DNA from: Paraphysomonas bandaiensis
Lineage: Eukaryota > Protista > Chrysophyceae
Length of the DNA: 64,000 bases
Assembly (NCBI GenBank): GCA_965644295.1
Contig: CBFFRP010000123.1
Coordinates: forward strand, 248,001 to 312,000
Reading direction: 5' to 3'
Positions 5,271-52,912 of this stretch are shown one piece after another. Numbering within the stretch: the first letter of the stretch is position 1; the number at the start of each line of letters is the position of its first letter. The notes below the pieces were generated by a model, which saw nothing but the letters and a program-made list of their open reading frames with translations, was not told the DNA's origin and made no database searches. The translations under genes were made by a program, and so were the position numbers.

Positions 5271-5666
5271 ACAAGAACTGTGTTCTATCTCGGAGATTTA
5301 ATGTTTGCAATCCAACTCTTCTACTAAACAAGCAATCCTAACCACACATTATATTTCCCCAACTACATCACTGTATATGTACGTATATTGTACTACACAA
5401 ATACAGGACATACATATTGACAGAAAACAATATCCCATATATGGGATATACTACGTTTTTTTTCCGTTGCACTGAAAGTGGAAACAACTGCATTGTATTA
5501 TATGAAGGAAGTGAATGTTAATATATAGTTTCTTTTAAGACTGATTGGTCAAAGAATTCACTTTCTTGACTGACTTTCACTTCGACGATATATTTGTTTT
5601 GTGTATAACACTGCGTACAGTTTATATGCCATTCATAGTCTTATAGAGTTATCTAGATTCAGAATA

Positions 5667-8600
5667 ATGTCACCGCTGCTGCTATGCATGCTGTTGATCT
5701 GCCCTCTTGTTTCAGCGATATCTGGGTTTTGGTATGGTGATAATCGAGGGCCATTGGTGTATGATACCATTCCTTATGCAAATTTTACGGTTAAAATAAA
5801 TAGACCTATTGATGAGGGTCCTGGACAGAATCTCATGTTTGATCCTGTAGATCCATCATTGAAAATATTCCCCGGTAATTCGATTAATAGGGAATCATTT
5901 GATACACAGTTTGTACTGGATATGGAGTATGCACTTGGTATACATCGTGATAGAGTGTATGTAACTCATGTAGAAGCAGCTAATGTGCACTTTTCTTGGG
6001 AGTCATATAGTGTGTTTGTTGAATTTATTTTCTTGGAAAGGAATTCGTCTGCGGATTTGACTCTTTTGGAAGCAGTTGCAAAGCTCACCGCGCAAATTCA
6101 AACACCAGGATCTCCTATATTCGATGGCACAAACGTGACGATGAATTTGGACCCTCTGTATGGTCTGGATGTGCGGGGGTGGGACATATCATTGCGACTT
6201 TTGTATCCCATTGAAGTGATTGGTAATTCGAGTGTAGTGGACGGTTACTATATCAATCAAGGCGGGTTGGGTTTCTGTGATAATAATGGTACAGCTAATT
6301 TTCTTATTCAATATTGTGAGTTCGAAAGGTTCTTCGAAGATGACGTCTCAGAAGCGCTCAACATATCTTATTACCGTATTCAGATTTTATTTGTGAAGAA
6401 AGCATCAGTAGATTCGAGTCTTATTCACTTTCGAGTTCTTCCACCCATGCAGGACACAAATGAAGATACCGTTTCGACAGCAATCGCAAACTTACTGACC
6501 CAAGTGCAGGATCAGTCTAGTGCTCTATATTTCGGCAACGTTACTATTCGCACAGACCCGCAGTGGGGAGTGTCTAACACCCTCCCCACTCCGCGAAGCC
6601 GAGAAGCGCTATTTACCTACAAGTACTATGATTACGATCCACGTCACCTTACGACAGACCGTGTTCCAGCTCAGCGCCGCCCACAATCCCTGGTCACTGA
6701 CTACTCTCGGTGTAAGGCAAACAGAAGATGTAACTGGGGCCATGTCGGTGTGTATTGTAGTTTGTTGTCATGTTGGAAAATTGTGCATCTGATTCTTGCT
6801 TTGTAGTGCATAACCAGTCGACGAACGATGTGCGCTACTATCAACGCCTTTTCGAGTTTGGTGAGTTAAGACCTATTAACCTATTTCTTGACTTCGAGGA
6901 CTGGCGTCTCGGTGCTCGAGGATTCACATGGGACGGTGACATTCCCCCAACACAGGAGGGACAAACATCTATTCCTTTAGCCCGAGCAGACCCGGGAAAA
7001 ATACGAGGGACACACTTCTGGCCCTTTGATCAGGATTCATTAGGGACAGATATCCCGTGCTTTATGGAAGAACGCAATCAAGGATTAGTACTTGATCGTA
7101 GACTGCATAACTCTCAAATTGGGATGCAGGAGGCACTGGTGTATGATCTTGAAGGAAGGGTGGACTGGATTGATGAAAATATAGAATATGCACGCATGGA
7201 CTCCGTGCGTAGATCACGAAAAGATGTCAAGGAATATATGACGACCGAAAAAATTCACTTCACCCAATGGCTCGAGAATGAGAGGGTAGAGCTGATAGAA
7301 CTGAACACATCGCAGTGTACTCTACAGAAATGCTCAATTACTTTCAACACATCATCGCTTGAGTTAACCGGGGCTGTTGAGGATAAAGGTTTGTATCAAT
7401 TTGTTCATATCCTATCATTTGATGTTAGTTGATAACACACAGGTGTCATTCGCTATACCTCCGCAGGGACTGAAGTGGCGGTTTTTAGTTTCAACTCTAT
7501 ATATCTGGGACCAGACACGGAAGTGATTCTTGTGGGACAGCGCGCATTTTCTTTAGTCAGCAAAACAACGGCTATTATAAATACTACGTTCAGAATTGTT
7601 CCAGGTACACTTGGCGGCTTCCCTGGTGGAAATAGTGTTGCTCGTTTAGCATCAGAAGTCTTGGTGGACAACCCAACAGGTATCGTTATATGTGAGCTCG
7701 GAAACTACTGTCTGAATAGGACTGGAGAGGGGAGCGTCCTCACTGACGAACAGCGGGAGAATCTCATTAGCAATAACGTAAATGGCCCAGGGTCTGGCAA
7801 CCTCCGCGTACATCCTTTTGTAATGCACTTGACGACTGATGACGTAGATGAAGTGCAAACTATCACAACTACCGCGCAAGATGGACAGACACTCGCGGGA
7901 GGATTCAAATTGTATTTCGGTAATTATGCGACTCCTGTCATTCCGTATGACGCGACCGCGGGAGAGATGAAGAAAATCATGGAGGATAGTTTGAACTTAG
8001 TCAAACCGGTCGATTTACCAGTGCAAGCAAATAGGGACACTGGAGGAAAAGCTGGTATTGGGCTAGTTAATGTGACTCGTTCGGCTCCAAGTGACGTGTT
8101 AGGATATGTGTGGACCGTCACGTTCACGACTGCAATAGGAAACATCGAACAGCTACGAGTCAAGAATTACCTGCAAGGTCTCGAAGCAAATGTGTGGACG
8201 AACACTACCGTGGATGGTAACGAGATAGGGGGGTCGTTTACTCTTAACTTTCAAGGACACACTACTGCTCCTATTTTGAGTGATGAGACAGCTGTCGGCC
8301 TGGAGCAGAAGCTTTTAGATCTGCCAGTTATACGGAGTGCATTTGTCGAGAGAAACGACCCGACTGAGAATTGTGATGATGGCCTATGTGCGAATGGGCC
8401 GTTTCAAGGGCGGGGATTTGTGTGGTCTGTGTATGTAACGACAGATGAGACAGTCGACAACTATACTCCTACGTCTCCAACTTCTCCACTAGCTTTGGAG
8501 GAGGGCCCGATCAAAAGGTTCACGGCTGATACATCTTCTCTAACAGGTTCTAACACGACCATTTCTTTCTCATGGGGTCTTGTCGAGTCACCCAACAAAC

Positions 8601-11600
8601 TTATGTCACTTCTCAATCTTTCCATCCCATTCTCTCTAGCTTGGGGCGGTGCTGGGGGATCATATGGGGGTCTAGGTGGGAAAGGATATTCACGTAATCC
8701 CGTTGGAAAGACGTATAGTGACGAGAGAATAAGTGACTTGCTTGGTGGGAGCGGTGGGTGTATGAGATCCGAATTTCCTTTTAAAATAAATTCATTTCGA
8801 GGGCCAACTTCCGGGAAGGGAGGACACGGCGGTGGGGCGATAGAGGTTGTTGCCGCGAATGATATTGTAATTGGAACCTATGGCCTCATATACGTCAATG
8901 GCGGAGATGGAGAGCAAACTTCGGAAGGGGGTGGAGGAGGTGGTAGCGGAGGCTCAATTCTTCTTGCCGCTGGTGGATCTGTAGTAAATGAGGGCATCCT
9001 GGATGCATCTGGCGGGAATGGTGGGTTTGGAGGGCCCGGAAATGGGACGATGCGAAGTCAACTGGCTCGTCAGTACTCTGGGACAAGTGGCAGAGGAGAG
9101 TATGCTGGCGGCGGAGGAGGGGGTGGTAGGGTTGCGATATTCGCCCAGTCTATTGTGAACTCGAACGGAATTATGACGGTTGAAGGCGGGAAATGTGGCA
9201 TATTCAAAATCAGTGTCAATGAAACTGTACAGCAACTTAATGTGTCATTTAATGTCTTGCTTCAAGGCCTTATTGATGAAGATATCTTAGTCAATCTTGT
9301 AGCAACATTCATTAACCAGACAATCGATACGGAATTTGTCAACATTCGTGATGTTGAAGTGAATGGACTGGTAGATGCAGCTCTGAACTATTCTATCATT
9401 GTAGCAGAGCATAGTAATGTGTCTCTTATCGAGGAAAAGTTCAATGACGCAGCTGGAACTAATCTGGCTGATGTTATTATTACGAATACCCGAATTTGGG
9501 GGACTGAATATTTGAGTATTACACCCGTGAGAGAGATTGAAACTCCTTGCAATAACAGTGGTGGCATCGGAACATTATTTACGGAGGCTTCCATGACGAC
9601 AGAGATGTACGTGCGACCTACTGAAGCTGCTGAGGGTACCAATCGTGCATTATTTTTGTCGAATCGAGAATCAACTTTTACAGCCACGGGGAGTGCAAGA
9701 GAAGCTCCTTTTGCTTGGAACGGTCCTATTATCCCGTTTGAACCATCGCAACCCACTCGGGTAACATATTACTCAAGGATGGACGGAGTTCCTGGAGAAT
9801 CAAAGAAATCTAATTTTGGAACGTTGTTTTCTATCCTTAGTCGTGGTGGAGTAGAAGGTTTGAATGTGTCGTCGGTGATAGGAGTTTTTATTGGTGACAA
9901 GATCAAACATGGGGCTAATTTTGGTTCCAATGTGGACGAGGACTTATATCTAAAGCGTTTAACTGTTATCGACGAATTTCCTGCCTTCGATCGGTGGTAT
10001 AAAGTTGATATTCATATTAGATGGGATACTCATACATATTTTATTCTCCTTGATGACACATTAGTGGTTAAAGACCAGAAATTTGTTGGGGATGATGTCG
10101 ACGGCTTGAGGCTATCAGTAAGCAGGGCAACTGATGTATGGTTTGATGAAATTTATGTAGGCTTTGATAATAACTTAAACTTCGAATGTCCTGCAACAAG
10201 TCGTAGTGGTCCGTCCAGTAATATTCCGGAACAAAGGGGTTGGGCACTAGATGAAGTAAATGCAAAGGATTCCAATGGGTTTACTGAGTTCAATAGAATG
10301 TCGAGACATTACTCTCATCTGGAGACCGAGAATGCCGTGCCGTTTGATGGTCAAGGTCACGTTAAAGTGTTCGAAGATATTAAATTCAAGTTCTCCGATG
10401 GTGATTATCCTATTAAACCTGGGAAGTTGCATGCCGGTGCCCTGAGGTACTTGACAAACTCTGCTCGAAGTGGAAGGCGGCCGCTTGGCAACAGTGCTAC
10501 TCTAGTCTCCCCAAATGGGTTGTGGAACTTAGCCAAGGATGGAATAGGGGGTGCTGGAGATGGTCGCCATTACTTGTATGTCGAACACGCTGATAAAGAC
10601 AACTCTTCTTATTCCACTGGAGGTGTAGCAGCCTGCAGTTCTCAAGATCTGAGTTCGTGGAGATTCGAAGGAATTGTGTTCCATAATGAAAATCTAACTG
10701 ACATGGTATTCGGTATAGATGGACCGTTCAGTATCGAGCGTCCGACAATTATCTTTAATCCGACCACATCAGAATATGTGATGTGGGCCACTATGAATGA
10801 CCCAGACAGGGAATTGGCAATTGCAGCTGTGGCGTCGTCGCCATACGAAGATGGGCCATTTTTATTTAGAAGGTCTCTGTACCCTGACGGGAATCGAACT
10901 CGTGATCAGGCGGCGTTTATTAACGATGAGGGTCGTGCAGTATTGGGCCGAACTTATTATTCTACACTGGAGTATATTATGCCGGAAGCTGTCATGCAGC
11001 CTACATGGGAGAGTGTGAAAAATCGTGATGGAACAATAAACTTTCGTCTAAATTATCACCGAGCAAATTATACGGAGGGATACGATAACTTTCACGATAT
11101 ATATCTTCAGAGGTGGCGAAAGGAAGATATTCCGTACAAAGTTGAATGTGTTAACAAAGTCACTAATGAGGTTCGTGAAGTTCCCAGTGGAGTCTATAAC
11201 GAGGATGGTGAGGTGTGTGATGACCCGTTCGAGTATAAAGTTATCACTGGTCAGGGAAATCCGCCTATCGAGACGAAGTTCATCAGTCCCAACAGCTCGG
11301 ACAACTCATGGTGGATGCAGACATCTGTGCCCTCTGTGAAAGCGCAGCCATGGGCAAGTAGCTACCGTGATGGGTACTGTGGTATTCGTAAGCTCGATGA
11401 TGGTATTGAAATTGATGATCCTATTCTTGCGGAATTTACCCCGACATCTCGAGGAGATTGCTCAAATATTGCTGATAATAAACCCCATGGAACTTTACAG
11501 GACAAACTAATTGGTGTACAGAGAGTTGTGCTACAGCGTAGGGCAAAATATATTGCTATCAGTGAACTTACTGGAGACTTTATGGATACAACTGGAAAGA

Positions 11601-11869
11601 TGAGGAGTTTCGAAGGCGAGTTATCTTCCGGAAATCTTATCACACTCATTGCTGAAAATGGGCAGTTTGAATTTGGGCCAGGCGAAAAGTTGGCCACTAC
11701 TTTTCAAGCTCCAAAGCGTTCTGAGTATAACACTGCTTACGATTACAAATATCGCTTCAGACAATACATGTTTAATAGGAATGATCGCGCAGAGTATGCG
11801 TTGGCATGTGTTATTGATAATGTTTGTCCAGTGAACTTCGCAGATCAGCTGACTGTAGGTCACACTTAA
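5667..11869 (+). CDS. Giant secreted multidomain protein (about 2000 aa) with Gly-rich region and C-terminal GH43-like beta-propeller; 3 exons
   Basis: Signal peptide MSPLLLCMLLICPLVSA; introns near 6748-6806 and 7389-7443; EVQTITT/GGFKLYF/WTVTF repeats; GGGGGSGGSI motifs; GH43-type SSQDLSSWRFEG, IERPTIIFNPTTSEYVMW, ASSPYEDGPF, RDQAAF. Confidence 0.8.
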
Positions 11870-22397: not shown

Positions 22398-24032
22398 TCA
22401 TTTCCTGTACCGAAACGAATCCCCTCCCTTCTCTTCCTCATCTTCTTCGAAGTCGCTGTCGTACTGGTCACTGTCATCCGCATGTTTCTCGTCATACGTG
22501 GACTGCTTTCTGTATTTCTTCTTTCCAGGTCGGTCGCTTTCCAAGTCCCTCAGCCACGTTGCTACCCCCTGTAACACATGATAGAGAGCGCATCACATAT
22601 GGTATTCTCGTGATAATAGAACACACTCTCATACCTCACGAGCTGAATCAATGTCAAGGAAATTTTCAGTGAACCAGGCGGCCTCCAAGTACACTCTGAT
22701 AGCATTTCATAATCAAACACTATCAGATTGGATTGAAGTGCGTAATATACTCATCTAAGTGCACACTGCACTGTGTACAACTCACTCTGCTTTTCGCTTC
22801 TGCTTGGGATCAGCCGATAAGGCAGCAGACAGAAACGAAGCCATATTCCTAGAGCAGCTCCGGGGAATGACTTCATCAAAACCGCTGTATGCAAGGTCTT
22901 CTAGTCGCTGCAGAAGGTCGATGGGGGAGATAGAAGTGTCCTCAAAAGGGTACTTTTTGTCCCACACCTCAATGAGAGTAACAGCTACACTCCAGACGTC
23001 AGATGAAGTGTTATACTCGTCTCCAAGCAGTCTAAAACATTAGTATTATACCCATAAGGTTGATACCCACAAAAATCAGTCCATTACCTCTCAATGGACA
23101 TATAACGAAAAGTACCGATGCTGGTGGAGGAAAAGGCTTGGGAGTTGTCCAGAGCGCGCGCAATGCCAAAATCAGACAGCTTAACTTGTCCATATGAATT
23201 CACCAGTACGTTACCAGGCTTGATATCTCTGTTTCAAGCAATCGAAATTGGTGACATAAGCTCAATAAAAGCGAATGAGTAGCAGCAATGACACACACCT
23301 GTGCAACATATTGTCATGATGAAGATAGGCCAGTCCCCACATTATCTACGACACTTGTAAATAATCAGAACTCCCTATATTCTAGTTATACTACCTGGAA
23401 TGAGATACAAGCCATTGCATAATCTGATACTTCCATGTGTGGGTCAAGCATAAACTCGAGAGATCCTCGATCCATGTATTCTAGGATTACCCCAACTTTA
23501 CCACTGTCCTGGTACGCACCGTAAAAGGCAATCAGGGAGTCACACATTACCCCTGAAAGGGTGGATATCTCTTTTCGCAGTTGACTTCTACGCTCCTTGT
23601 CATAAACACTAAATAACTTAATCGCGTAGTGTTGCCCTAGTGGAAACCTTGACTACGAAATCACGACCAACATTTACAATGTACCTGTGCCTTTGTGTCG
23701 ACTTTTATAAACACTCGAACATGCACCTTGGCCAATTCTCTTTCCAAGTATTAAATCATCCTACATAAACCCAGTAATTAATTCCACATACATAGATATA
23801 TAACAGTAGGCTACTGCTATCCACCTGGTTGATCTCCATCGGGAGATGCTCTCCTTGTATCCTGAGGCCCTGCATACTGACACTCAACTCACCATCACGA
23901 AAGGTACCAGTTCCCGTCCCACCAAAATCAATTGAATCTTCAAATCTAAGCCAGATGACTGAGTAATAATAAATCAGTTGTGAGGGTTACTTACTTATCA
24001 TCCACCTGCAAAGCAAGTCCACTGAGCTGCAT
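22398..24032 (-). CDS. Mitogen-activated protein kinase kinase (MAP2K/STE7 family), multi-exon
   Basis: Spliced translation: [41 protein letters not shown], activation loop [13 protein letters not shown] (S-x5-T), SDVWS; acidic C-terminal tail. Confidence 0.85.
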
Positions 24033-24410
24033 TAGGATTCAATGTGAGAAGAATTGGAATATTATACAATTGAAAGTGTTATTATGAGTGAGCTGCTATT
24101 AAATTATATAAGCAGCAGCTATGGATTTAGTGGTGTGACATATATATATATATACATGTATGCGGTATGTATGTATGGAAGTAGTTGTAAAAGCCGTTCA
24201 CGGCGTACCTCTCATGTTGTCATGTAGTACGGCTGTGGTACCGTAGCATGTGTATTTCGTACTGTGGCAGTATCCTCGCAGTACAGCAGTACACTGTACA
24301 GCAATGTAAAGGTGTGATGTACAGTACCAGTGTACTTGTACTGTACAATAGTACATGCACTCCTCTATCGTGTCCATCAACCTCTTCAAGCCCATCACTA
24401 TAACCTCCCT

Positions 24411-26633
24411 ATGCCCTCTGCATACTATTCAGTCAAGAAAGGAAGAAGCACAGGAGTGTTTAACACTTGGGATGAGTGCTCTCAACTAGTGATCGGGTAT
24501 CCAGGTGCTGAATATAAGAAGTTTAAGAGTAAAGCAGAGGCAGAGGCATATGCCTCTATATCGCCTAATATCTCACCCTCTATAAAGAAAAACACACCTA
24601 ATCCCTCACCATCTACAGGTAATTCATCACATCTGTCAGTGGATACCAAAGATCGACTGTCGGGAATAGCCTCCAGCTACTATGCGGTGCGTCATGGTCG
24701 TCATAAGGGGGTGTTTACTACTTGGGAAGAATGTAAACAATCTGTAAGCAGTTTTCCTGGAGCAGAATTTAAGAAATTCAAAAGAAAGAGTGAGGCAGAT
24801 GATTATGTTAACTCAGCTACCCCTTCAAAAATTGCTAAATCTGTCCGTAGTTCCGTTTCAAGGAATAGTGTTTCGGGTAGTCAAAATTTAGAGAATCTTA
24901 AGGAAGAGTTTAAGCTCTCCAATTGTCAGCTGAATGCTATAAAATATGTTCTCAAAGGCTACGATGTGTTTATATCTGGTCCAGCAGGTGTTGGAAAGTC
25001 ATTTGTTGTGGAGGTGCTTCAAAAATGTTACGCCGCCCTTTGTCAATCCCACTCTGCAAGTGAAAATAATGACAATGATATATGCCCGTCTATTGCCTTC
25101 ACTGCCTCTACGGGATGTGCCGCCAGCTGTATTAGAGGAGAGACTATTCATTCATGGGCTGGAGTAGGTATGGGCTTGACGTCTGAGCTCACTCCGCTCG
25201 AGCTTGTAGCGAAAATGGCTACACCTGCCAAAAAGAGATGGAGACGCACGGCGTGCTTACTTATCGATGAAGTTAGTATGCTTGCAGCGGGAGACTTAGA
25301 CAAGCTCTCTGAGATTGCATGTATACTACGTGGTAAGAAGGAACCTTTCGGAGGCATGCAGGTAGTATTGGTGGGGGATTTTTTTCAGTTGCCACCAGTC
25401 AAGCAAGCAACCGCTTATTGTTTTCAATCCCATGTATGGTCTGAGCTGTTCTCTCAGACGTCATCCAGTGAACGGAGGGGTGTTGTAGTATTACTAGATC
25501 AGATTGTACGGCAAAAAGATATGCATTTCTGTAGGATGCTTAATGAAGTAAGATGGGGACGAGTCAGCGAGACAACACACACAACACTTTACGAGAAGTG
25601 TCAGCAGTGTATGGTAGGGCAGAGTGCGACTACGACTACGAAATCAGTAAAACTCTTCAGTTTAGTACGGGACGTCGATCGTGTAAACGAAGAAAATCTC
25701 TTACTATTACCTGGTGACGTAGTGTCGTTTCTCGCGGAAGACTCCTCGCACCACTTGACAGGCCGCCTTAATAGTGAAACGAAGGCAGCAGAGTGCTTGA
25801 ACCTGAAGCGTGGTGCTCAGGTAATGTTAATACAGAATTTGGATCCATCACAAGGGCTAGTTAATGGTACCATTGGCCGAGTAGTTAGATTTGAAAATGT
25901 TCTGTCTGAGGATGGCACAGAACTAGAGAAGAGACCAGTCGTTCGATTTTTTGTGAATCGAGTAAGTGGTACTTCTCATGACGAGCAAAGAGCGATGGCA
26001 CGTGGACTCTCTCAGCGGATTCCGGGGCATAATAAGGGATATATCCGACTCTGTCAGCTTGGGTATACGCCTTGGACTGGTCTGGGAAAGGAGGAGCAGG
26101 GTAGATCTGAGCCTATTAGTCTTCCTCTTGTCAACAAGGTGTCAATGGGATTATCAGTACCAACCAGTGATATCATCGAACGCACAATGGATTATGAATG
26201 TTTTCACCTTCACGATGCGTATCAAGAAGTAATTGGAACTCGAAAGCAAATACCACTAATTTTAGCATATGCTATGACTATTCATAAGGTATGTTCACAT
26301 TGTGACTTGTGGAACCATGTGTCACGGGGTATTTCCATGTTGTAGTCTCAAGGAATGAGCATACCGGACCTAGATATTGATATGAGGGGAATATTTACCA
26401 GCGGTCAAGCTTATGTTGCTCTCAGTCGAGCAATTAGCTTTGATTCTCTTCGATTACACTCATACAACGTCAAGTTGATCAGAGCGAATTCTTCTGTAGT
26501 ACAATACTACTCTGCTCTATCCAAAGATATCTCCAGTAAATGCGATAGTAACGAATTTGTATCGACTTCTATACATGACTTAATAACATCATGTCGACAA
26601 GAAAATGTGGACAAATATAGAGATATAATATGA
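24411..26633 (+). CDS. Pif1-family helicase with two RNase H1 N-terminal hybrid-binding domains and an internal G-patch
   Basis: HBDs YYSVKKGRSTGVFNTWDEC...YKKF and YYAVRHGRHKGVFTTWEEC...FKKF; helicase motifs GPAGVGKS, TASTG, TIHSWAG, IDEVSM, PFGGMQVVLVGDFFQLPPV, RQKD, GAQVMLIQN, LVNG, QIPLILAYAMTIHK|SQG (intron 26289-26345), GQAYVALSR. Confidence 0.9.
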
Positions 26634-27044
26634 CTAAAGTAGTGCCTTTCGTTTTTTATTCGTTTGTCCTTGTGCTCGAAAATATTTTCCTGCCAGCGAG
26701 TTATGAACACACGTGTCAAGGTATCACGATGTGCTACAAACTTTAAAAAGTAAGGGGATGTTTCATTGTTCTGTACTTCAAAGTATTTTAACACCTGTTT
26801 GTTACACCGTGCATGAGTCCCAAAATTTCGTTGTAATAGCGAGATACTAACAGTATTCGAGATACTATAAATGCGATGAAAAAGTACTGCATATGAGACA
26901 TGTGTGTAAGGCGTATGGTTGCACGGGTGTTAATCACAGTTTATTAATCTAACTACTTGTGCAGTATGATACAAAGAAAGAACAACACCATTTTTTAAGT
27001 TATAAATATAATCAAATTAAACCCTAGTCAAATGCACTTCAATG

Positions 27045-28068
27045 CAGGCTTGAGTAACAATTAATTTGTGACGGATTCCCAACAATAATAATTGCTATTA
27101 CTAATCAAGCATCCAATTATTTGCAATGCAATTAATCTCTGAACTCTGAACTATAATCTCATCACAAGGATGCCGATTCTCACGCAGAAACATCAACATT
27201 TCAATGTGTCTAGTTGTCATTCGCTTGAGAAAATCAGTCATAACAATCTTAGCTCTGCTAAAAAAACTTTCACAAACAATTCTTCATGCTACGATATCAT
27301 GTTGGCAGTTTGTGCGTACTTTTTTGCGCGTTCGGTTGTCTTTAAGTAAACGAATGGCCTCGCCTTCCTCCTCCACATCTTTCTCTTAATCGAGTTCACC
27401 TTTATGTGAAAGTACATCATTTATCAAAAAGCGTCGCACCTGTAATTTTCAGCGCGGTCCAGTTCTTCTTCCCTACCACGCTGAATTTTGACTACACTAC
27501 TCTCTCGAAATTTGCATTTTGTATCCAGGTGGGTTTCCGTCCCAGGATACTGACAAATTAAATCATCTAATTGCACCCGGACATCATCTAGATCAAGCTG
27601 TTTTTCTCCAGCTGTACACACACACTACGGTTTCTCTGTATGAGTGTATTTTTGCACACACATATAATTATTTTGATAGTGGTACCTAACAGATACGCTT
27701 TTAACGTCATTTACACCGCTATACTCGAGTATTTCGAAGCAGTTGAATATCTGCAATCACCTTATATGCCATGTATCTAGACGATCATTGTGGAGGTGCT
27801 CTGTTTGTTCTTTGCCAACGACCTTTGACATGACATACTCTATATTACCATTGCATGCTGAGGTTAAAGCGTATGATTAATAAAATGATAAAAAGACTGT
27901 GCATATACATCCAAACTTCTATGCTAACATACATCTATGATCAGTAGCTATACATATTGGATGCTATTTATAACTTAGCCAGCCAATTAATTGCAATTAA
28001 TTGGCAACATTGACCAATAATAATTAAAATTATCACTTTTAAAACCAATTAATTGTTACGCAAGCCTG
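27045..28068 (-). mobile_element. Non-autonomous hAT element, family A (1024 bp)
   Basis: TIRs CAGGCTTGAGTAACAATTAATT / AATTAATTGTTACGCAAGCCTG; 8-bp TSD CTTCAATG/CTTCTATG; hAT dimerisation-domain relic CESFFSRAKIVMTD...IEMLMFLREN. Confidence 0.9.
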
Positions 28069-47651: not shown

Positions 47652-48731
47652 TTATGTACTATCTTTCTTCTTACTCTTCAACAAATACCACATTGACAGA
47701 CACGCACGTGGGGTTCGTTTCTTACCGACATCTTCAGCAACTGAATGCCATAGCTCATTTCCTCTTAGATGATTTTGTGTCATATGATTCTCTACTGCAT
47801 TCTCTAGTCGCTCAATCTCGTCTTTCGTCCACAACTTCTTGAAGAAACTCCACCGGGTTTTACATTGATTTGGGGAGCGGACGTGGTTCATATACTTACT
47901 CACGTAAGTCCACGAGATTATTGCAGACGTACTGATTTTGAGATACTCTCGAACAGCTTCCTGTAAGGTCCTATCTTCCTCTTCTGTCCAACAATATTTC
48001 TTTTTCGAATATTTCAGATTCGTGCGCACAGCCCATCTGGAATTGCACTGTACGTGATTTACTTCACCGTTAAACAGCTTGGCTACTTCGTACCATGAAA
48101 TTCCGCCCATTTTACCCGCTCCTTTATACTTTTTTACACCCTCATCAAGCAACGCATCCATCTCTGGTGTCCACCTTATCCTTTTCTTTTTTTTCTTACC
48201 GTCTAGGGAAAACTGGAGATAACGCAGGTACCGTGAGTGACACTGCTGTAAGGTACGGGTTCCTACATGCTCGCATACTTTTGCCCATGATACCCGGCCA
48301 GATCTTCCCTGTCCATCATACAGTTTGACTCCCTCGATGAGCCTTTTATCTTCACTTTCACTCCAAGGCCCTTCTACTAAATCTGTACGACCCCGACTTT
48401 TTGTAAGATAATTCCATCTTAAGGCACACTGAATTGCGGATCTCCTTCCATTCATTAAATCTGAAATAACTTTCCATCTAATCTTATTCGATGTAGATGT
48501 CTGTGTATGTATACCCAGTGCTTCTACTAGAGCGTCAGTTTCCTCAGAGGACCATGCACCTTTACCATAACCAGATGCACTAGTACTTATTTTTGAAAGA
48601 TCAGAATTATAATCATAAGGATTCATACATAAATATCTCCTATTGATACTTCTGAAAGGTTTGTTGCCATTGTTATGAGTTACGTGTATTACAGAGGCAT
48701 ACAGTGCACGAAATGCACTGTACGAGCACAT
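47652..48731 (-). CDS. Five-repeat Myb/SANT protein, paralog 1, intronless
   Basis: Five W-x-x-E-E-D...W..V...R...QC..RW-type repeats; N-terminal about 39 aa with no acidic residues. Confidence 0.85.
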   Translation of the reverse strand: MCSYSAFRALYASVIHVTHNNGNKPFRSINRRYLCMNPYDYNSDLSKISTSASGYGKGAWSSEETDALVEALGIHTQTSTSNKIRWKVISDLMNGRRSAIQCALRWNYLTKSRGRTDLVEGPWSESEDKRLIEGVKLYDGQGRSGRVSWAKVCEHVGTRTLQQCHSRYLRYLQFSLDGKKKKKRIRWTPEMDALLDEGVKKYKGAGKMGGISWYEVAKLFNGEVNHVQCNSRWAVRTNLKYSKKKYCWTEEEDRTLQEAVREYLKISTSAIISWTYVSKYMNHVRSPNQCKTRWSFFKKLWTKDEIERLENAVENHMTQNHLRGNELWHSVAEDVGKKRTPRACLSMWYLLKSKKKDST

Positions 48732-51440: not shown

Positions 51441-52487
51441 TCAAGAAATACTTTTAATTTTCTTTAACCCATACCACCTTGCAACACAAGCATTGGCGCT
51501 ACGCTCTCCATCCATATGTTCACTAACCTTTTTCCATAGGGCTTTCCCCTTGAGATTAGATGTTTTCGTATATAGCTTAACGGCTTCTTCTAGTCGTTTG
51601 GTTTCCTCTTGTGACCAAGTCACAAAAATTTTCGATATGTGCTCTTCTTTATTAAGAAACCTCCATCTGAATCTACATTGACTGGCTGAACGGGTTTCGT
51701 TCATATACATGGACACTTTGTCCCATTCGACTACCAACTGCTGACTCTCAATTTCCAACTTTCGCACGGCATCTGTTAATTTCTCATCTTCCTCAGGAGT
51801 CCATGGAGCACTCTTGTGTTTTCCCTTTGAAGTAATAAGAAAACGCCACCTGTTATAGCACTGCGCATGTGTCTTCGTATTGTTAAAATATGATGCAGCC
51901 TTATTCCATAATTTCCCGCCATGAGCTCCTTCACGAGAATAGCGCTCTATGACCTTTTCCAGTATTACATCCTCTGCAGGTGTCCACTTTGCCCTGGGGG
52001 GCTTCCCATTGACAAAGTACTGAACACTAGCCACCCAACGTCGACGACACTGATCCCCATTACGGCCTCCAACAAGCTCACTCACTTTTGTCCAGGCTAT
52101 TCTTCCGTCTTTTCCTTCTTCACTGTATTTTTTGACAGCCGCAATAAGCTTGGCGTCCTCCTCGGGTGACCATCGTCCACACTTTAAGCTTTCGTGGTAC
52201 TGATACTTTGTTAGATGTGCCCATCTGTTTGCACATTGTGTGGTGGACCTTCTGTCATCCAAAAACCTAGAAACTTCTTTCCAAGCAATTCTATCTGGTT
52301 TCCCTTTTTTTCCCGGAATAGTAAACGTTTTGACACCTTTAAAAAGGGCTGCATCTTCATCATACGACCATAAGCCCTGTTTAAATCCAGCCGTACAAAA
52401 GTACTTCACATTCGCCCTCCTGTATAGGGTATTGATGTTAATACTCGAGATCAGGAAATTATTGCATGTAATCAACATGCGAAACAT
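51441..52487 (-). CDS. Five-repeat Myb/SANT protein, paralog 2, intronless
   Basis: Five Myb repeats (e.g. WSPEEDAKL...WTKVSELVGGRNGDQCRRRW); N-terminus MFRMLITCNNFLISSININTLYRRANVKYFCT. Confidence 0.85.
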   Translation of the reverse strand: MFRMLITCNNFLISSININTLYRRANVKYFCTAGFKQGLWSYDEDAALFKGVKTFTIPGKKGKPDRIAWKEVSRFLDDRRSTTQCANRWAHLTKYQYHESLKCGRWSPEEDAKLIAAVKKYSEEGKDGRIAWTKVSELVGGRNGDQCRRRWVASVQYFVNGKPPRAKWTPAEDVILEKVIERYSREGAHGGKLWNKAASYFNNTKTHAQCYNRWRFLITSKGKHKSAPWTPEEDEKLTDAVRKLEIESQQLVVEWDKVSMYMNETRSASQCRFRWRFLNKEEHISKIFVTWSQEETKRLEEAVKLYTKTSNLKGKALWKKVSEHMDGERSANACVARWYGLKKIKSIS

Positions 52488-52912
52488 ACTAGAGACACAG
52501 CACTTAATATGCAAAATGATTATTACAGTCAGTAAATAATGAAACCAAAATACTAAATAACAAAAAAGTTAAAGATGTTGACTTTCAATGACGAAGTTAT
52601 TCCATAAGTAAGTTATTCCTTAAGACCCCTAGAGTGTGTATGTATTCTACGCTTCCGTCCATTGAGCAGCAATGCTTACCTGCCAATCACCTTGAGCACT
52701 GACCTGCTGCTGGTGATGTTTGAGAGAAAATGTACCTGTAGGTACTGTATATGACTATCGGTACTACAGTACATCTGTGTACTTGTGTATCTATGATGCT
52801 GTAGTATACAGCATCATGACGTCTTTAACATTGACAGGATAGCTATGTATGTATGTACGTATATATAGGCATTGACTTAAGATTCAAGTATAGCCTCATT
52901 AAAACACAAAGA

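What the first reader, a model, noticed from the sequence alone, without database searches (positions are those of the whole stretch)
26019..26117. G-patch motif inserted inside the Pif1 helicase 2B region
Seen: IPGHNKGYIRLCQLGYTPWTGLGKEEQGRSEPI lies in frame between the LVNG motif and QIPLILAYA, where Pif1 normally has only the SH3-like 2B subdomain. It fits the G-patch consensus (N.G..hL.khGW..G.GLG...qG...PI), with W replacing one Gly. Known: G-patches activate DEAH RNA helicases Prp43/DHX15 and bind RNA. Inference: one protein may recognise hybrids, unwind them and recruit a DEAH RNA helicase, linking R-loop removal to splicing or ribosome-biogenesis machinery.
Basis: partly seen in the sequence, partly recalled or inferred. 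Interest (0 to 1): 0.88.

Follow-up and report, generated by a model that had tools for sequence, protein, structure and literature searches.

The report
Pif1 DNA helicase carrying a G-patch
A golden-alga-type flagellate and its relatives make a DNA-unwinding enzyme (Pif1) that carries two RNA:DNA-hybrid-binding domains and, inside its core, the short peptide that cells use to recruit and switch on the RNA helicase Prp43; I found no description of this combination, and it may pair a DNA motor with an RNA motor to pull RNA off DNA.

Summary
The G-patch is real. It passes Pfam's cut-off, though narrowly (22.2 bits against 22). It is in frame and stays in a spliced transcript; only a 57-nt intron further downstream is removed. 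It belongs to a ~75-residue insert in one loop of the SH3-like 2B domain of a Pif1 that also has two RNase H1 hybrid-binding domains (HBDs). Nine further divergent homologs carry the insert at the same site. Their G-patch core is as conserved as the helicase core (0.50 vs 0.54-0.57; linkers ~0.2). The residues that contact DHX15 in the NKRF structure are kept, but one consensus Gly is Trp in 9 of 10. The insert is closest to the host's GPATCH11/Cmg1. The host has Prp43/DHX15, a second ordinary Pif1, and two RNase H1 genes without a detectable HBD. Best reading (inferred, ~0.5): a hybrid-targeted Pif1 that tethers Prp43; both motors would move the same way on opposite strands. No binding or activity was shown. 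One branch lost the brace-loop and another let the motif decay. HBD-Pif1 fusions are known; I found no paper on a Pif1 G-patch. The scan had noted the HBD fusion on this same gene, and no such G-patch elsewhere in this genome.

The parts
24411..26288 (+). Exon 1 (626 codons): two HBDs, Pif1 helicase 1A/2A/2B, G-patch insert, up to TIHK
24423..24551 (+). RNase H1 hybrid-binding domain 1 (Pfam Cauli_VI, aa 5-47)
24678..24806 (+). RNase H1 hybrid-binding domain 2 (aa 90-132); the Trp and Lys-Lys of human and yeast HBDs are kept
24978..25001 (+). Walker A (aa 190-197)
25260..25280 (+). Walker B (aa 284-290)
25509..25559 (+). Motif IV and Pif1 signature region (aa 367-383)
25764..25949 (+). First part of the SH3-like 2B domain (Pfam Pif1_2B aa 452-494) through the strand ending at aa 513
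25953..26177 (+). Family-specific insert (~75 aa) looping out between two SH3 strands
25980..26030 (+). Helix upstream of the G-patch (aa 524-540); resembles the stretch before the G-patch of GPATCH11 and NKRF, not significant on its own
26031..26156 (+). Full G-patch (aa 541-582): brace-helix 26031-26066, Trp-for-Gly turn 26073-26087, G...P 26100-26117, brace-loop 26142-26156
   Evidence: PMC7132122
26178..26288 (+). Rest of 2B and return to 2A (QIPL ... TIHK)
26289..26345 (+). 57-nt GT..AG intron between TIHK and SQG; a GT follows TIHK in all 7 genomic family sequences checked
26346..26633 (+). Exon 2: end of motif V, motif VI, stop

Best explanation
This is a second, lineage-specific nuclear Pif1 of a chrysophyte-type flagellate. 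It has two N-terminal hybrid-binding domains and a GPATCH11/Cmg1-like G-patch grafted into a loop of its SH3-like 2B domain. SHOWN: the architecture, expression, insertion site, conservation, intact helicase motifs, and a host Prp43/DHX15 with its main G-patch site intact. INFERRED: the HBDs hold the enzyme on RNA:DNA hybrids; Pif1 moves 5'-3' on the DNA strand and frees the RNA 3' end; the looped-out G-patch binds Prp43/DHX15 through brace-helix and brace-loop, and so tethers and probably stimulates this 3'-5' RNA translocase. On an antiparallel hybrid the two motors move in the same physical direction, so Prp43 could keep pulling or strip the released RNA where Pif1 alone is poorly processive. 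The conserved core of the job is probably tethering, since one branch kept the brace-helix but lost the brace-loop.
For: Pfam and PDB matches, with the NKRF G-patch as best PDB hit of the family profile including its brace-loop. Positions equivalent to NKRF G555, L559, G563, aromatic 564 and L569 are kept in 10/10 members, and L591 in 8/10. G-patch core identity 0.50 against 0.15-0.22 in linkers and 0.54-0.57 in the helicase core. Loop length 97-102 aa in most members against a median of 26.5 in 230 Pif1s. Exonic in X1 and X5 and in the intron-free homolog P0002. AF2 model of P0002 (mean pLDDT 84.5) keeps the Pif1 fold and places two helices and an extended, lower-confidence chain between SH3 strands. 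Host DHX15 winged-helix site kept. Nearly all human DHX15-type G-patches stimulate DHX15 in isolation, and Cmg1 binds and stimulates Prp43. Prp43 unwinds DNA/RNA substrates with an RNA tail and G-patches stimulate this (PMC4322301). ScPif1 unwinds only 15-20 bp of hybrid per binding event (PMC8998199). A separate Pif1 (P0135) carries a G-patch in its C-terminal tail.
Against: No binding or activity data, and no complex could be modelled. The window's Pfam score is borderline. Trp replaces the third Gly in 9/10 members, whereas 86 of 93 other G-patches have Gly there and none Trp; Trp this invariant points to some family-specific contact. The G-patch is pinned at both ends in a folded domain, unlike the free tails of known cofactors (my knowledge). 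P0122/P0123 lack the brace-loop, whose mutation in NKRF abolishes stimulation, and P0133 has a decayed insert. Human RBM6 has the key residues yet does not stimulate DHX15. P0135's tail G-patch is not shared by its closest kin.
Confidence: 0.52

Rival explanations
1. The insert came from a G-patch protein but has been repurposed. It now packs on Pif1's own 2B/2A surface or binds a non-DEAH partner and tunes unwinding, much as yeast's 2C insert does from the neighbouring loop.
For: Family-specific invariants that the G-patch consensus does not demand: the Trp, the aromatic after the first Gly, a conserved Arg/Leu before the motif, and S-x-G-L. Tight length conservation. Yeast 2C regulates unwinding through loop3 (PMC5814829). 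2B moves during unwinding (PMC4824106 title).
Against: The conserved positions are the DHX15-contacting ones and the glycines that shape the bound peptide. P0124 has a fully canonical G-patch at the same site (38.1 bits). Two other host G-patch loci also lack the third Gly, with Asp or Lys there. AF2 gives only moderate-to-low confidence for the insert, with no sign of a packed domain.
Confidence: 0.2
2. The G-patch binds a DEAH helicase but not to unwind hybrids together. It anchors Pif1 on a Prp43-containing particle (pre-ribosomes at rDNA, or late spliceosomes), sequesters Prp43, or binds Prp2/DHX16 or DHX35. This includes the first reader's splicing or ribosome link.
For: G-patch cofactors compete for Prp43 and redistribute it (PMC4829300). 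Loss of the brace-loop keeps partial binding but removes stimulation, which fits P0122/P0123. The host has several DEAH helicases. Human GPATCH11 associates with spliceosomal complexes.
Against: No splicing-type domains in the protein. Eight of ten members keep the brace-loop needed for activation. The closest relative type (Cmg1/GPATCH11) is a Prp43 cofactor.
Confidence: 0.17
3. The insert is a tolerated relic of an old gene-capture event and has no current function.
For: Borderline Pfam score in the window; decay in P0133 and truncation in P0122/P0123; SH3 loops of Pif1 tolerate inserts.
Against: The core is about as conserved as the helicase across proteins only 36-49% identical, while the linkers on both sides have drifted to ~0.2.
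Confidence: 0.07
4. The G-patch binds the displaced RNA or single-stranded DNA directly and acts as an extra nucleic-acid grip.
For: Some G-patches bind RNA (GPATCH1, GPKOW, Spp382, Sqs1); exposed Tyr and Trp could stack on bases (inference).
Against: DHX15-type G-patches and Cmg1 do not bind RNA on their own.
Confidence: 0.03
5. The segment is an intron or a chance match.
For: A donor-like GTAAGT lies at 25962 with an in-frame AG at 26138; the public gene model P0005 splices the insert out.
Against: Retained in spliced contigs; open only in the coding frame in nearly all homolog DNAs, and the donor-like site is absent from the other seven; the DNA under P0005 reads through in frame and matches P0001; 0 of 200,000 shuffles match.
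Confidence: 0.01

Closest known systems
G-patch cofactors of DHX15/Prp43: GPATCH11/Cmg1 (closest), NKRF, SUGP1, Ntr1/TFIP11, PINX1/Pxr1
   Same: Brace-helix, Gly-aromatic turn, GLG, G...P and brace-loop Leu. Best host match is GPATCH11 (39.7 bits, next 27.5; hhalign probability 95%); best PDB match is NKRF.
   Different: It sits inside a folded DNA-helicase domain, anchored at both ends; Trp replaces the third Gly; no DUF4187, R3H or other RNA-processing domain.
Pif1 helicases with RNase H1-like hybrid-binding domains (amoebae, Harman and Manna 2016, as cited in 10.1101/163188; Nucleocytoviricota HBD-Pif1, often with uracil-DNA glycosylase)
   Same: HBD fused in front of a Pif1 core.
   Different: Those scanned here have no G-patch. 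This family has two HBDs, a conserved spliceosomal intron, and forms its own clade (100/99); its relation to the viral group is unresolved (55/50).
Saccharomyces cerevisiae Pif1 with the 2C insert
   Same: A large insert protruding from the SH3-like 2B domain, proposed to regulate activity or bind partners (PMC5814829).
   Different: 2C is a helical bundle that starts at the loop matching window aa ~495; the G-patch insert lies one strand later, after aa 513, and is unrelated in sequence.
RecBCD (working analogy only)
   Same: A 5'-3' SF1B motor whose SH3 2B domain contacts a 3'-5' motor on the other strand (PMC5814829, PMC13101046).
   Different: No homology to RecB or RecC; the proposed partner is an SF2 RNA helicase bound through a peptide; the pairing is not shown.

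Membership tests
G-patch (PF01585) | Pfam score at or above the gathering cut-off | tested here: met
   22.2 bits vs 22 on exon 1, 26.4 on the piece; 6/6 aligned members hit; P0124 38.1, P0122 33.0
G-patch (PF01585) | Brace-helix with first Gly and hydrophobic residue, invariant second Gly followed by an aromatic | tested here: met
   G543, L547, G551, Y552; 10/10 members; helix predicted
G-patch (PF01585) | Third consensus Gly (start of GxGlG) | tested here: not met
   Trp in 9/10, Gly only in P0124. Not strictly invariant in the family: NKRF is one residue shorter here and two host G-patch loci have Asp or Lys
G-patch (PF01585) | GlG, later Gly and Pro, terminal G-hydrophobic brace-loop | tested here: met
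   G557-L558-G559, G564, P568, G580-L581; the residue after L581 is Ser, not the last consensus Gly; brace-loop absent in P0122/P0123
G-patch cofactor of DEAH helicases | Binds and stimulates DHX15/Prp43 (or DHX16, DHX35) | not testable with these tools
   No complex prediction or assay available; the host DHX15 winged-helix site is conserved
GPATCH11/Cmg1 orthologs | N-terminal acidic motif and C-terminal DUF4187 | tested here: not met
   Absent from this protein; the host's true GPATCH11 is a separate gene, L014. Only the G-patch module is shared
Pif1 helicases (SF1B) | Motifs I, Ia, II, III, IV, V, VI and Pif1 signature | tested here: met
   (exons searched apart)
Pif1 helicases (SF1B) | SH3-like 2B domain and overall fold | tested here: met
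   Pfam Pif1_2B E 7e-13; AF2 model of homolog P0002 matches human Pif1, TM 0.88-0.89 by target
Pif1 helicases (SF1B) | 5'-3' ATP-dependent unwinding | not testable with these tools
   Inferred from intact motifs
RNase H1 hybrid-binding domain | Cauli_VI match with the Trp and Lys-Lys kept | tested here: met
   123.8 bits, two copies; aligned to 1qhk, 3bsu, 6vrd
Helitron helicase | Fused Rep/HUH nuclease domain, multicopy element | tested here: not met
   No such Pfam domain; single copy in the genome
Nucleocytoviricota HBD-Pif1 | Groups with the viral clade; viral context | tested here: inconclusive
   Family plus viral-type clade has support 55/50; an earlier quick tree with the insert left in placed it with host-type Pif1s. 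Context is eukaryotic with a conserved intron; no G-patch version found in viral contigs

The most novel reading that the evidence does not exclude
A peptide-tethered two-motor machine for RNA:DNA hybrids: the HBDs clamp the hybrid, Pif1 pulls on the DNA strand 5'-3', and the G-patch in its SH3 loop holds and activates Prp43/DHX15 on the RNA strand 3'-5'. It would be a RecBCD-like bipolar helicase built from a DNA and an RNA helicase, in a cell whose RNase H1 enzymes lack their own hybrid-binding domains.
Probability: 0.22. Interest if true: 0.88.

Novelty: new variant of a known kind. Interest (0 to 1): 0.63.

Why it matters
The G-patch cofactors covered in the reviews read here act in splicing, ribosome assembly, capping or retroviral packaging; none is a DNA helicase. 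A G-patch kept under selection inside Pif1 would give Prp43/DHX15 a direct role at RNA:DNA hybrids, and it makes a clean test possible: two purified proteins and one hybrid substrate. It would also show whether a G-patch can work when pinned at both ends and with Trp at a Gly position. A practical point: one public gene model cuts the insert out as a false intron, so the family is easy to miss. Limits: the family is small (about 11 clusters), apparently confined to one algal lineage without strong genetics, and the function is inferred from sequence alone.

Tried and rejected
Intron or annotation artefact: rejected. Helitron or multicopy element: rejected. A word-index search on the insert alone found nothing; the profile search did. 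A first AF2 model from 6 sequences was poor (pLDDT 55) and was not used. The upstream helix alone did not pick out GPATCH11 (E 5.2), so that assignment rests on the whole insert. Origin from giant-virus HBD-Pif1 versus duplication of the host Pif1: two trees disagreed, so it is left open. Pattern scans of metagenome and viral contigs gave only ordinary Pif1 ends. P0135's tail G-patch is not conserved in its kin, so it is weak support. The P. imperforata probe PIMP 663 does not match the 18S; a Chrysophyceae probe matches with 2 mismatches. Paper search for Pif1 plus G-patch gave 4 papers whose titles and abstracts do not concern such a fusion (not read in full). The ESM Atlas showed no cluster combining the two. 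No Rfam hit in the window. The two exons were searched separately and the joined protein was not built or searched; the fold was done on the natural intron-free homolog P0002. Searches were input slips.

Full report
Observation. Pfam finds two RNase H1 hybrid-binding domains (HBD, Cauli_VI), a PIF1 core, a Pif1 2B domain and a G-patch at aa 547-571. The G-patch scores 22.2 bits against a cut-off of 22 on exon 1, and 26.4 bits (E 6.6e-6) on a short piece. A relaxed consensus matched none of 200,000 shuffles.

Gene structure. A 57-nt GT..AG intron (26289-26345) splits TIHK from SQG. A 2558-nt contig from run X1 covers 24413-27027 and lacks only that intron, so the G-patch is exonic. A spliced contig from run X5 also includes part of it, and a poly(A) marine metatranscriptome covers 25957-26239. 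X1 and X5 are guessed RNA runs, and contigs cannot exclude a rare skipping isoform. Exon 2 supplies motifs V-VI. The public model P0005 drops the insert as a predicted intron, but its DNA reads through in frame and is nearly identical to P0001, which has the G-patch.

Family. Two searches found the insert at the same site in P0001-P0004, P0006 and P0121-P0124; the full-length ones are 36-45% identical to the window by BLAST. P0133 has two HBDs and a decayed insert. All 7 genomic family sequences checked have GT after TIHK, and P0002 is intron-free there like a transcript. Neighbouring genes look eukaryotic. With the insert removed, the family is one clade (100/99), but its place relative to viral-type HBD-Pif1s and ordinary Pif1s is unresolved (55/50). 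The host has a second, ordinary Pif1. The host 18S matches a Chrysophyceae probe with two mismatches and not the P. imperforata probe; earlier scan notes call it Paraphysomonas, which I could only partly check.

Selection on the motif. Mean pairwise identity over ten members is 0.50 in the G-patch core and 0.44 in the brace-loop, against 0.15-0.22 in the linkers and 0.54-0.57 in the helicase core. The loop is 97-102 aa in most members and 90-92 in the branch without the brace-loop, against a median of 26.5 in 230 Pif1s. The family profile's best PDB hit is the NKRF G-patch, aligned through its brace-loop. In the DHX15-NKRF structure the contacts are G555, L559, G563, W564, L569 and L591 (PMC7132122). 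The equivalents G543, L547, G551, Y552 and L558 are kept in 10/10 members and L581 in 8/10. The third Gly is Trp in 9/10 and Gly in P0124. Among 93 other G-patches none has Trp there, but two host G-patch loci have Asp or Lys, so the Gly is not essential. Among the host's other G-patch loci the insert is closest to GPATCH11 (39.7 bits, next 27.5), and at least 60 of the 142 further profile hits carry GPATCH11-type motifs. GPATCH11 is listed as the ortholog of yeast Cmg1, a direct Prp43 activator.

Structure. An AF2 model of the homolog P0002 (mean pLDDT 84.5) has the Pif1 fold (TM 0.88-0.89 to human Pif1 by target). It shows the insert as a helix, a short brace-helix and an extended lower-confidence chain between two SH3 strands. 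Against human Pif1 the site follows the strand ending at chain residue 315. Yeast Pif1's 2C insert starts one loop earlier. That the flanking helix and linkers give enough slack for the G-patch to stretch across a DEAH helicase is my inference; I could not measure it.

Host context. A Prp43/DHX15 gene is present and keeps the winged-helix residues of G-patch site 1, with Met for Leu536. The only HBDs detected in the 62.6-Mb genome are the two in this gene. Two RNase H1-type genes show no HBD within the fetched loci; an intron-split or more distant exon could be missed.

Mechanism. Shown: architecture, expression, conservation, and presence of the partner. Inferred: the HBDs bind hybrids; Pif1 runs 5'-3' on DNA and displaces RNA, but yeast Pif1 manages only 15-20 bp per binding event (PMC8998199). 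DEAH helicases run 3'-5' (PMC5473145 abstract), and Prp43 unwinds RNA-tailed DNA/RNA substrates better with a G-patch (PMC4322301). On an antiparallel hybrid these directions coincide, as for RecD and RecB, and RecD's SH3 2B domain is the part that touches RecB (PMC5814829; PMC13101046). I put tethering of Prp43 for work on hybrids at about 0.5, and the strict two-motor version within it at about 0.2. Direct RNA binding is disfavoured.

Comparison and novelty. HBD-Pif1 fusions are described in amoebae and are common in giant viruses. G-patches and Pif1 are both well known. I found no report of a G-patch in Pif1 and no Atlas cluster with both; the paper library lacks most subscription journals, including the amoebal Pif1 paper itself. 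One unrelated Pif1 (P0135) has a G-patch in its tail, not shared by its kin. The protein is a member of the Pif1 family on every feature tested. The insert is a G-patch by profile and by most consensus positions, fails one consensus Gly, and is untested as a cofactor.

Verdict. Real, expressed, conserved and apparently undescribed: a new variant of a known kind, interest 0.63. The function remains a hypothesis with a direct bench test.

Noticed in passing
whole genome G000; L034 (C419) and L035 (C89): The only RNase H1 hybrid-binding domains detected in the genome are the two on this Pif1; both RNase H1-type genes show none. L034 starts with a mitochondrial-presequence-like stretch; L035 has a long unannotated C-terminal extension.
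   Followed up: partly
P0135 / L023:6001-8154: An ordinary-type Pif1 with a G-patch in its C-terminal tail (32.3 bits), apparently a second, independent Pif1-G-patch fusion; absent from close kin P0274 and P0284.
   Followed up: partly
L001:3479-5514 (GCA_964200205.2, labelled Ectocarpus fasciculatus): The NCBI model P0005 omits both HBDs and splices out the G-patch as an in-frame 'intron', though the DNA reads through. The contig may come from a contaminating chrysophyte (inference).
   Followed up: yes
P0122, P0123, P0133: Natural variants: P0122/P0123 keep the brace-helix but lack the brace-loop; P0133 has a decayed insert. Useful built-in controls.
   Followed up: partly
P0001, P0003, P0005: Walker B reads EE instead of DE in these family members.
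   Followed up: no
P0015, P0017, P0018 and many others: A large set of proteins, probably of giant viruses, fuse an HBD, Pif1 and uracil-DNA glycosylase in one chain.
   Followed up: no
window 27045-27278: High-copy repeat just past the 3' end of the transcript (summed contig depth in the thousands in run X11, a poly-T loose end in X1); possibly a short retroposon.
   Followed up: no
window 23824-24096, minus strand: A spliced transcript (49-nt intron 23946-23994) runs away from the Pif1 gene, leaving about 315 bp between the two contig ends; a likely divergent promoter.
   Followed up: no
window 24330: Run X11 has G>A here, which makes an in-frame ATG 27 codons upstream of 24411; not covered by the RNA contig and not seen in homologs.
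   Followed up: no
window 25962: A perfect donor-like GTAAGT at the start of the insert with an in-frame AG at 26138; not conserved in homologs and not used in the contigs seen.
   Followed up: partly
window 47652-48731 (+) and 51441-52514 (-): Two related ORFs with several Myb-like repeats, read by eye from the ORF list; already noted by the scan.
   Followed up: no
window 5601-11869 (+): A very large predicted secreted or surface protein gene with glycine-rich stretches; not annotated here.
   Followed up: no
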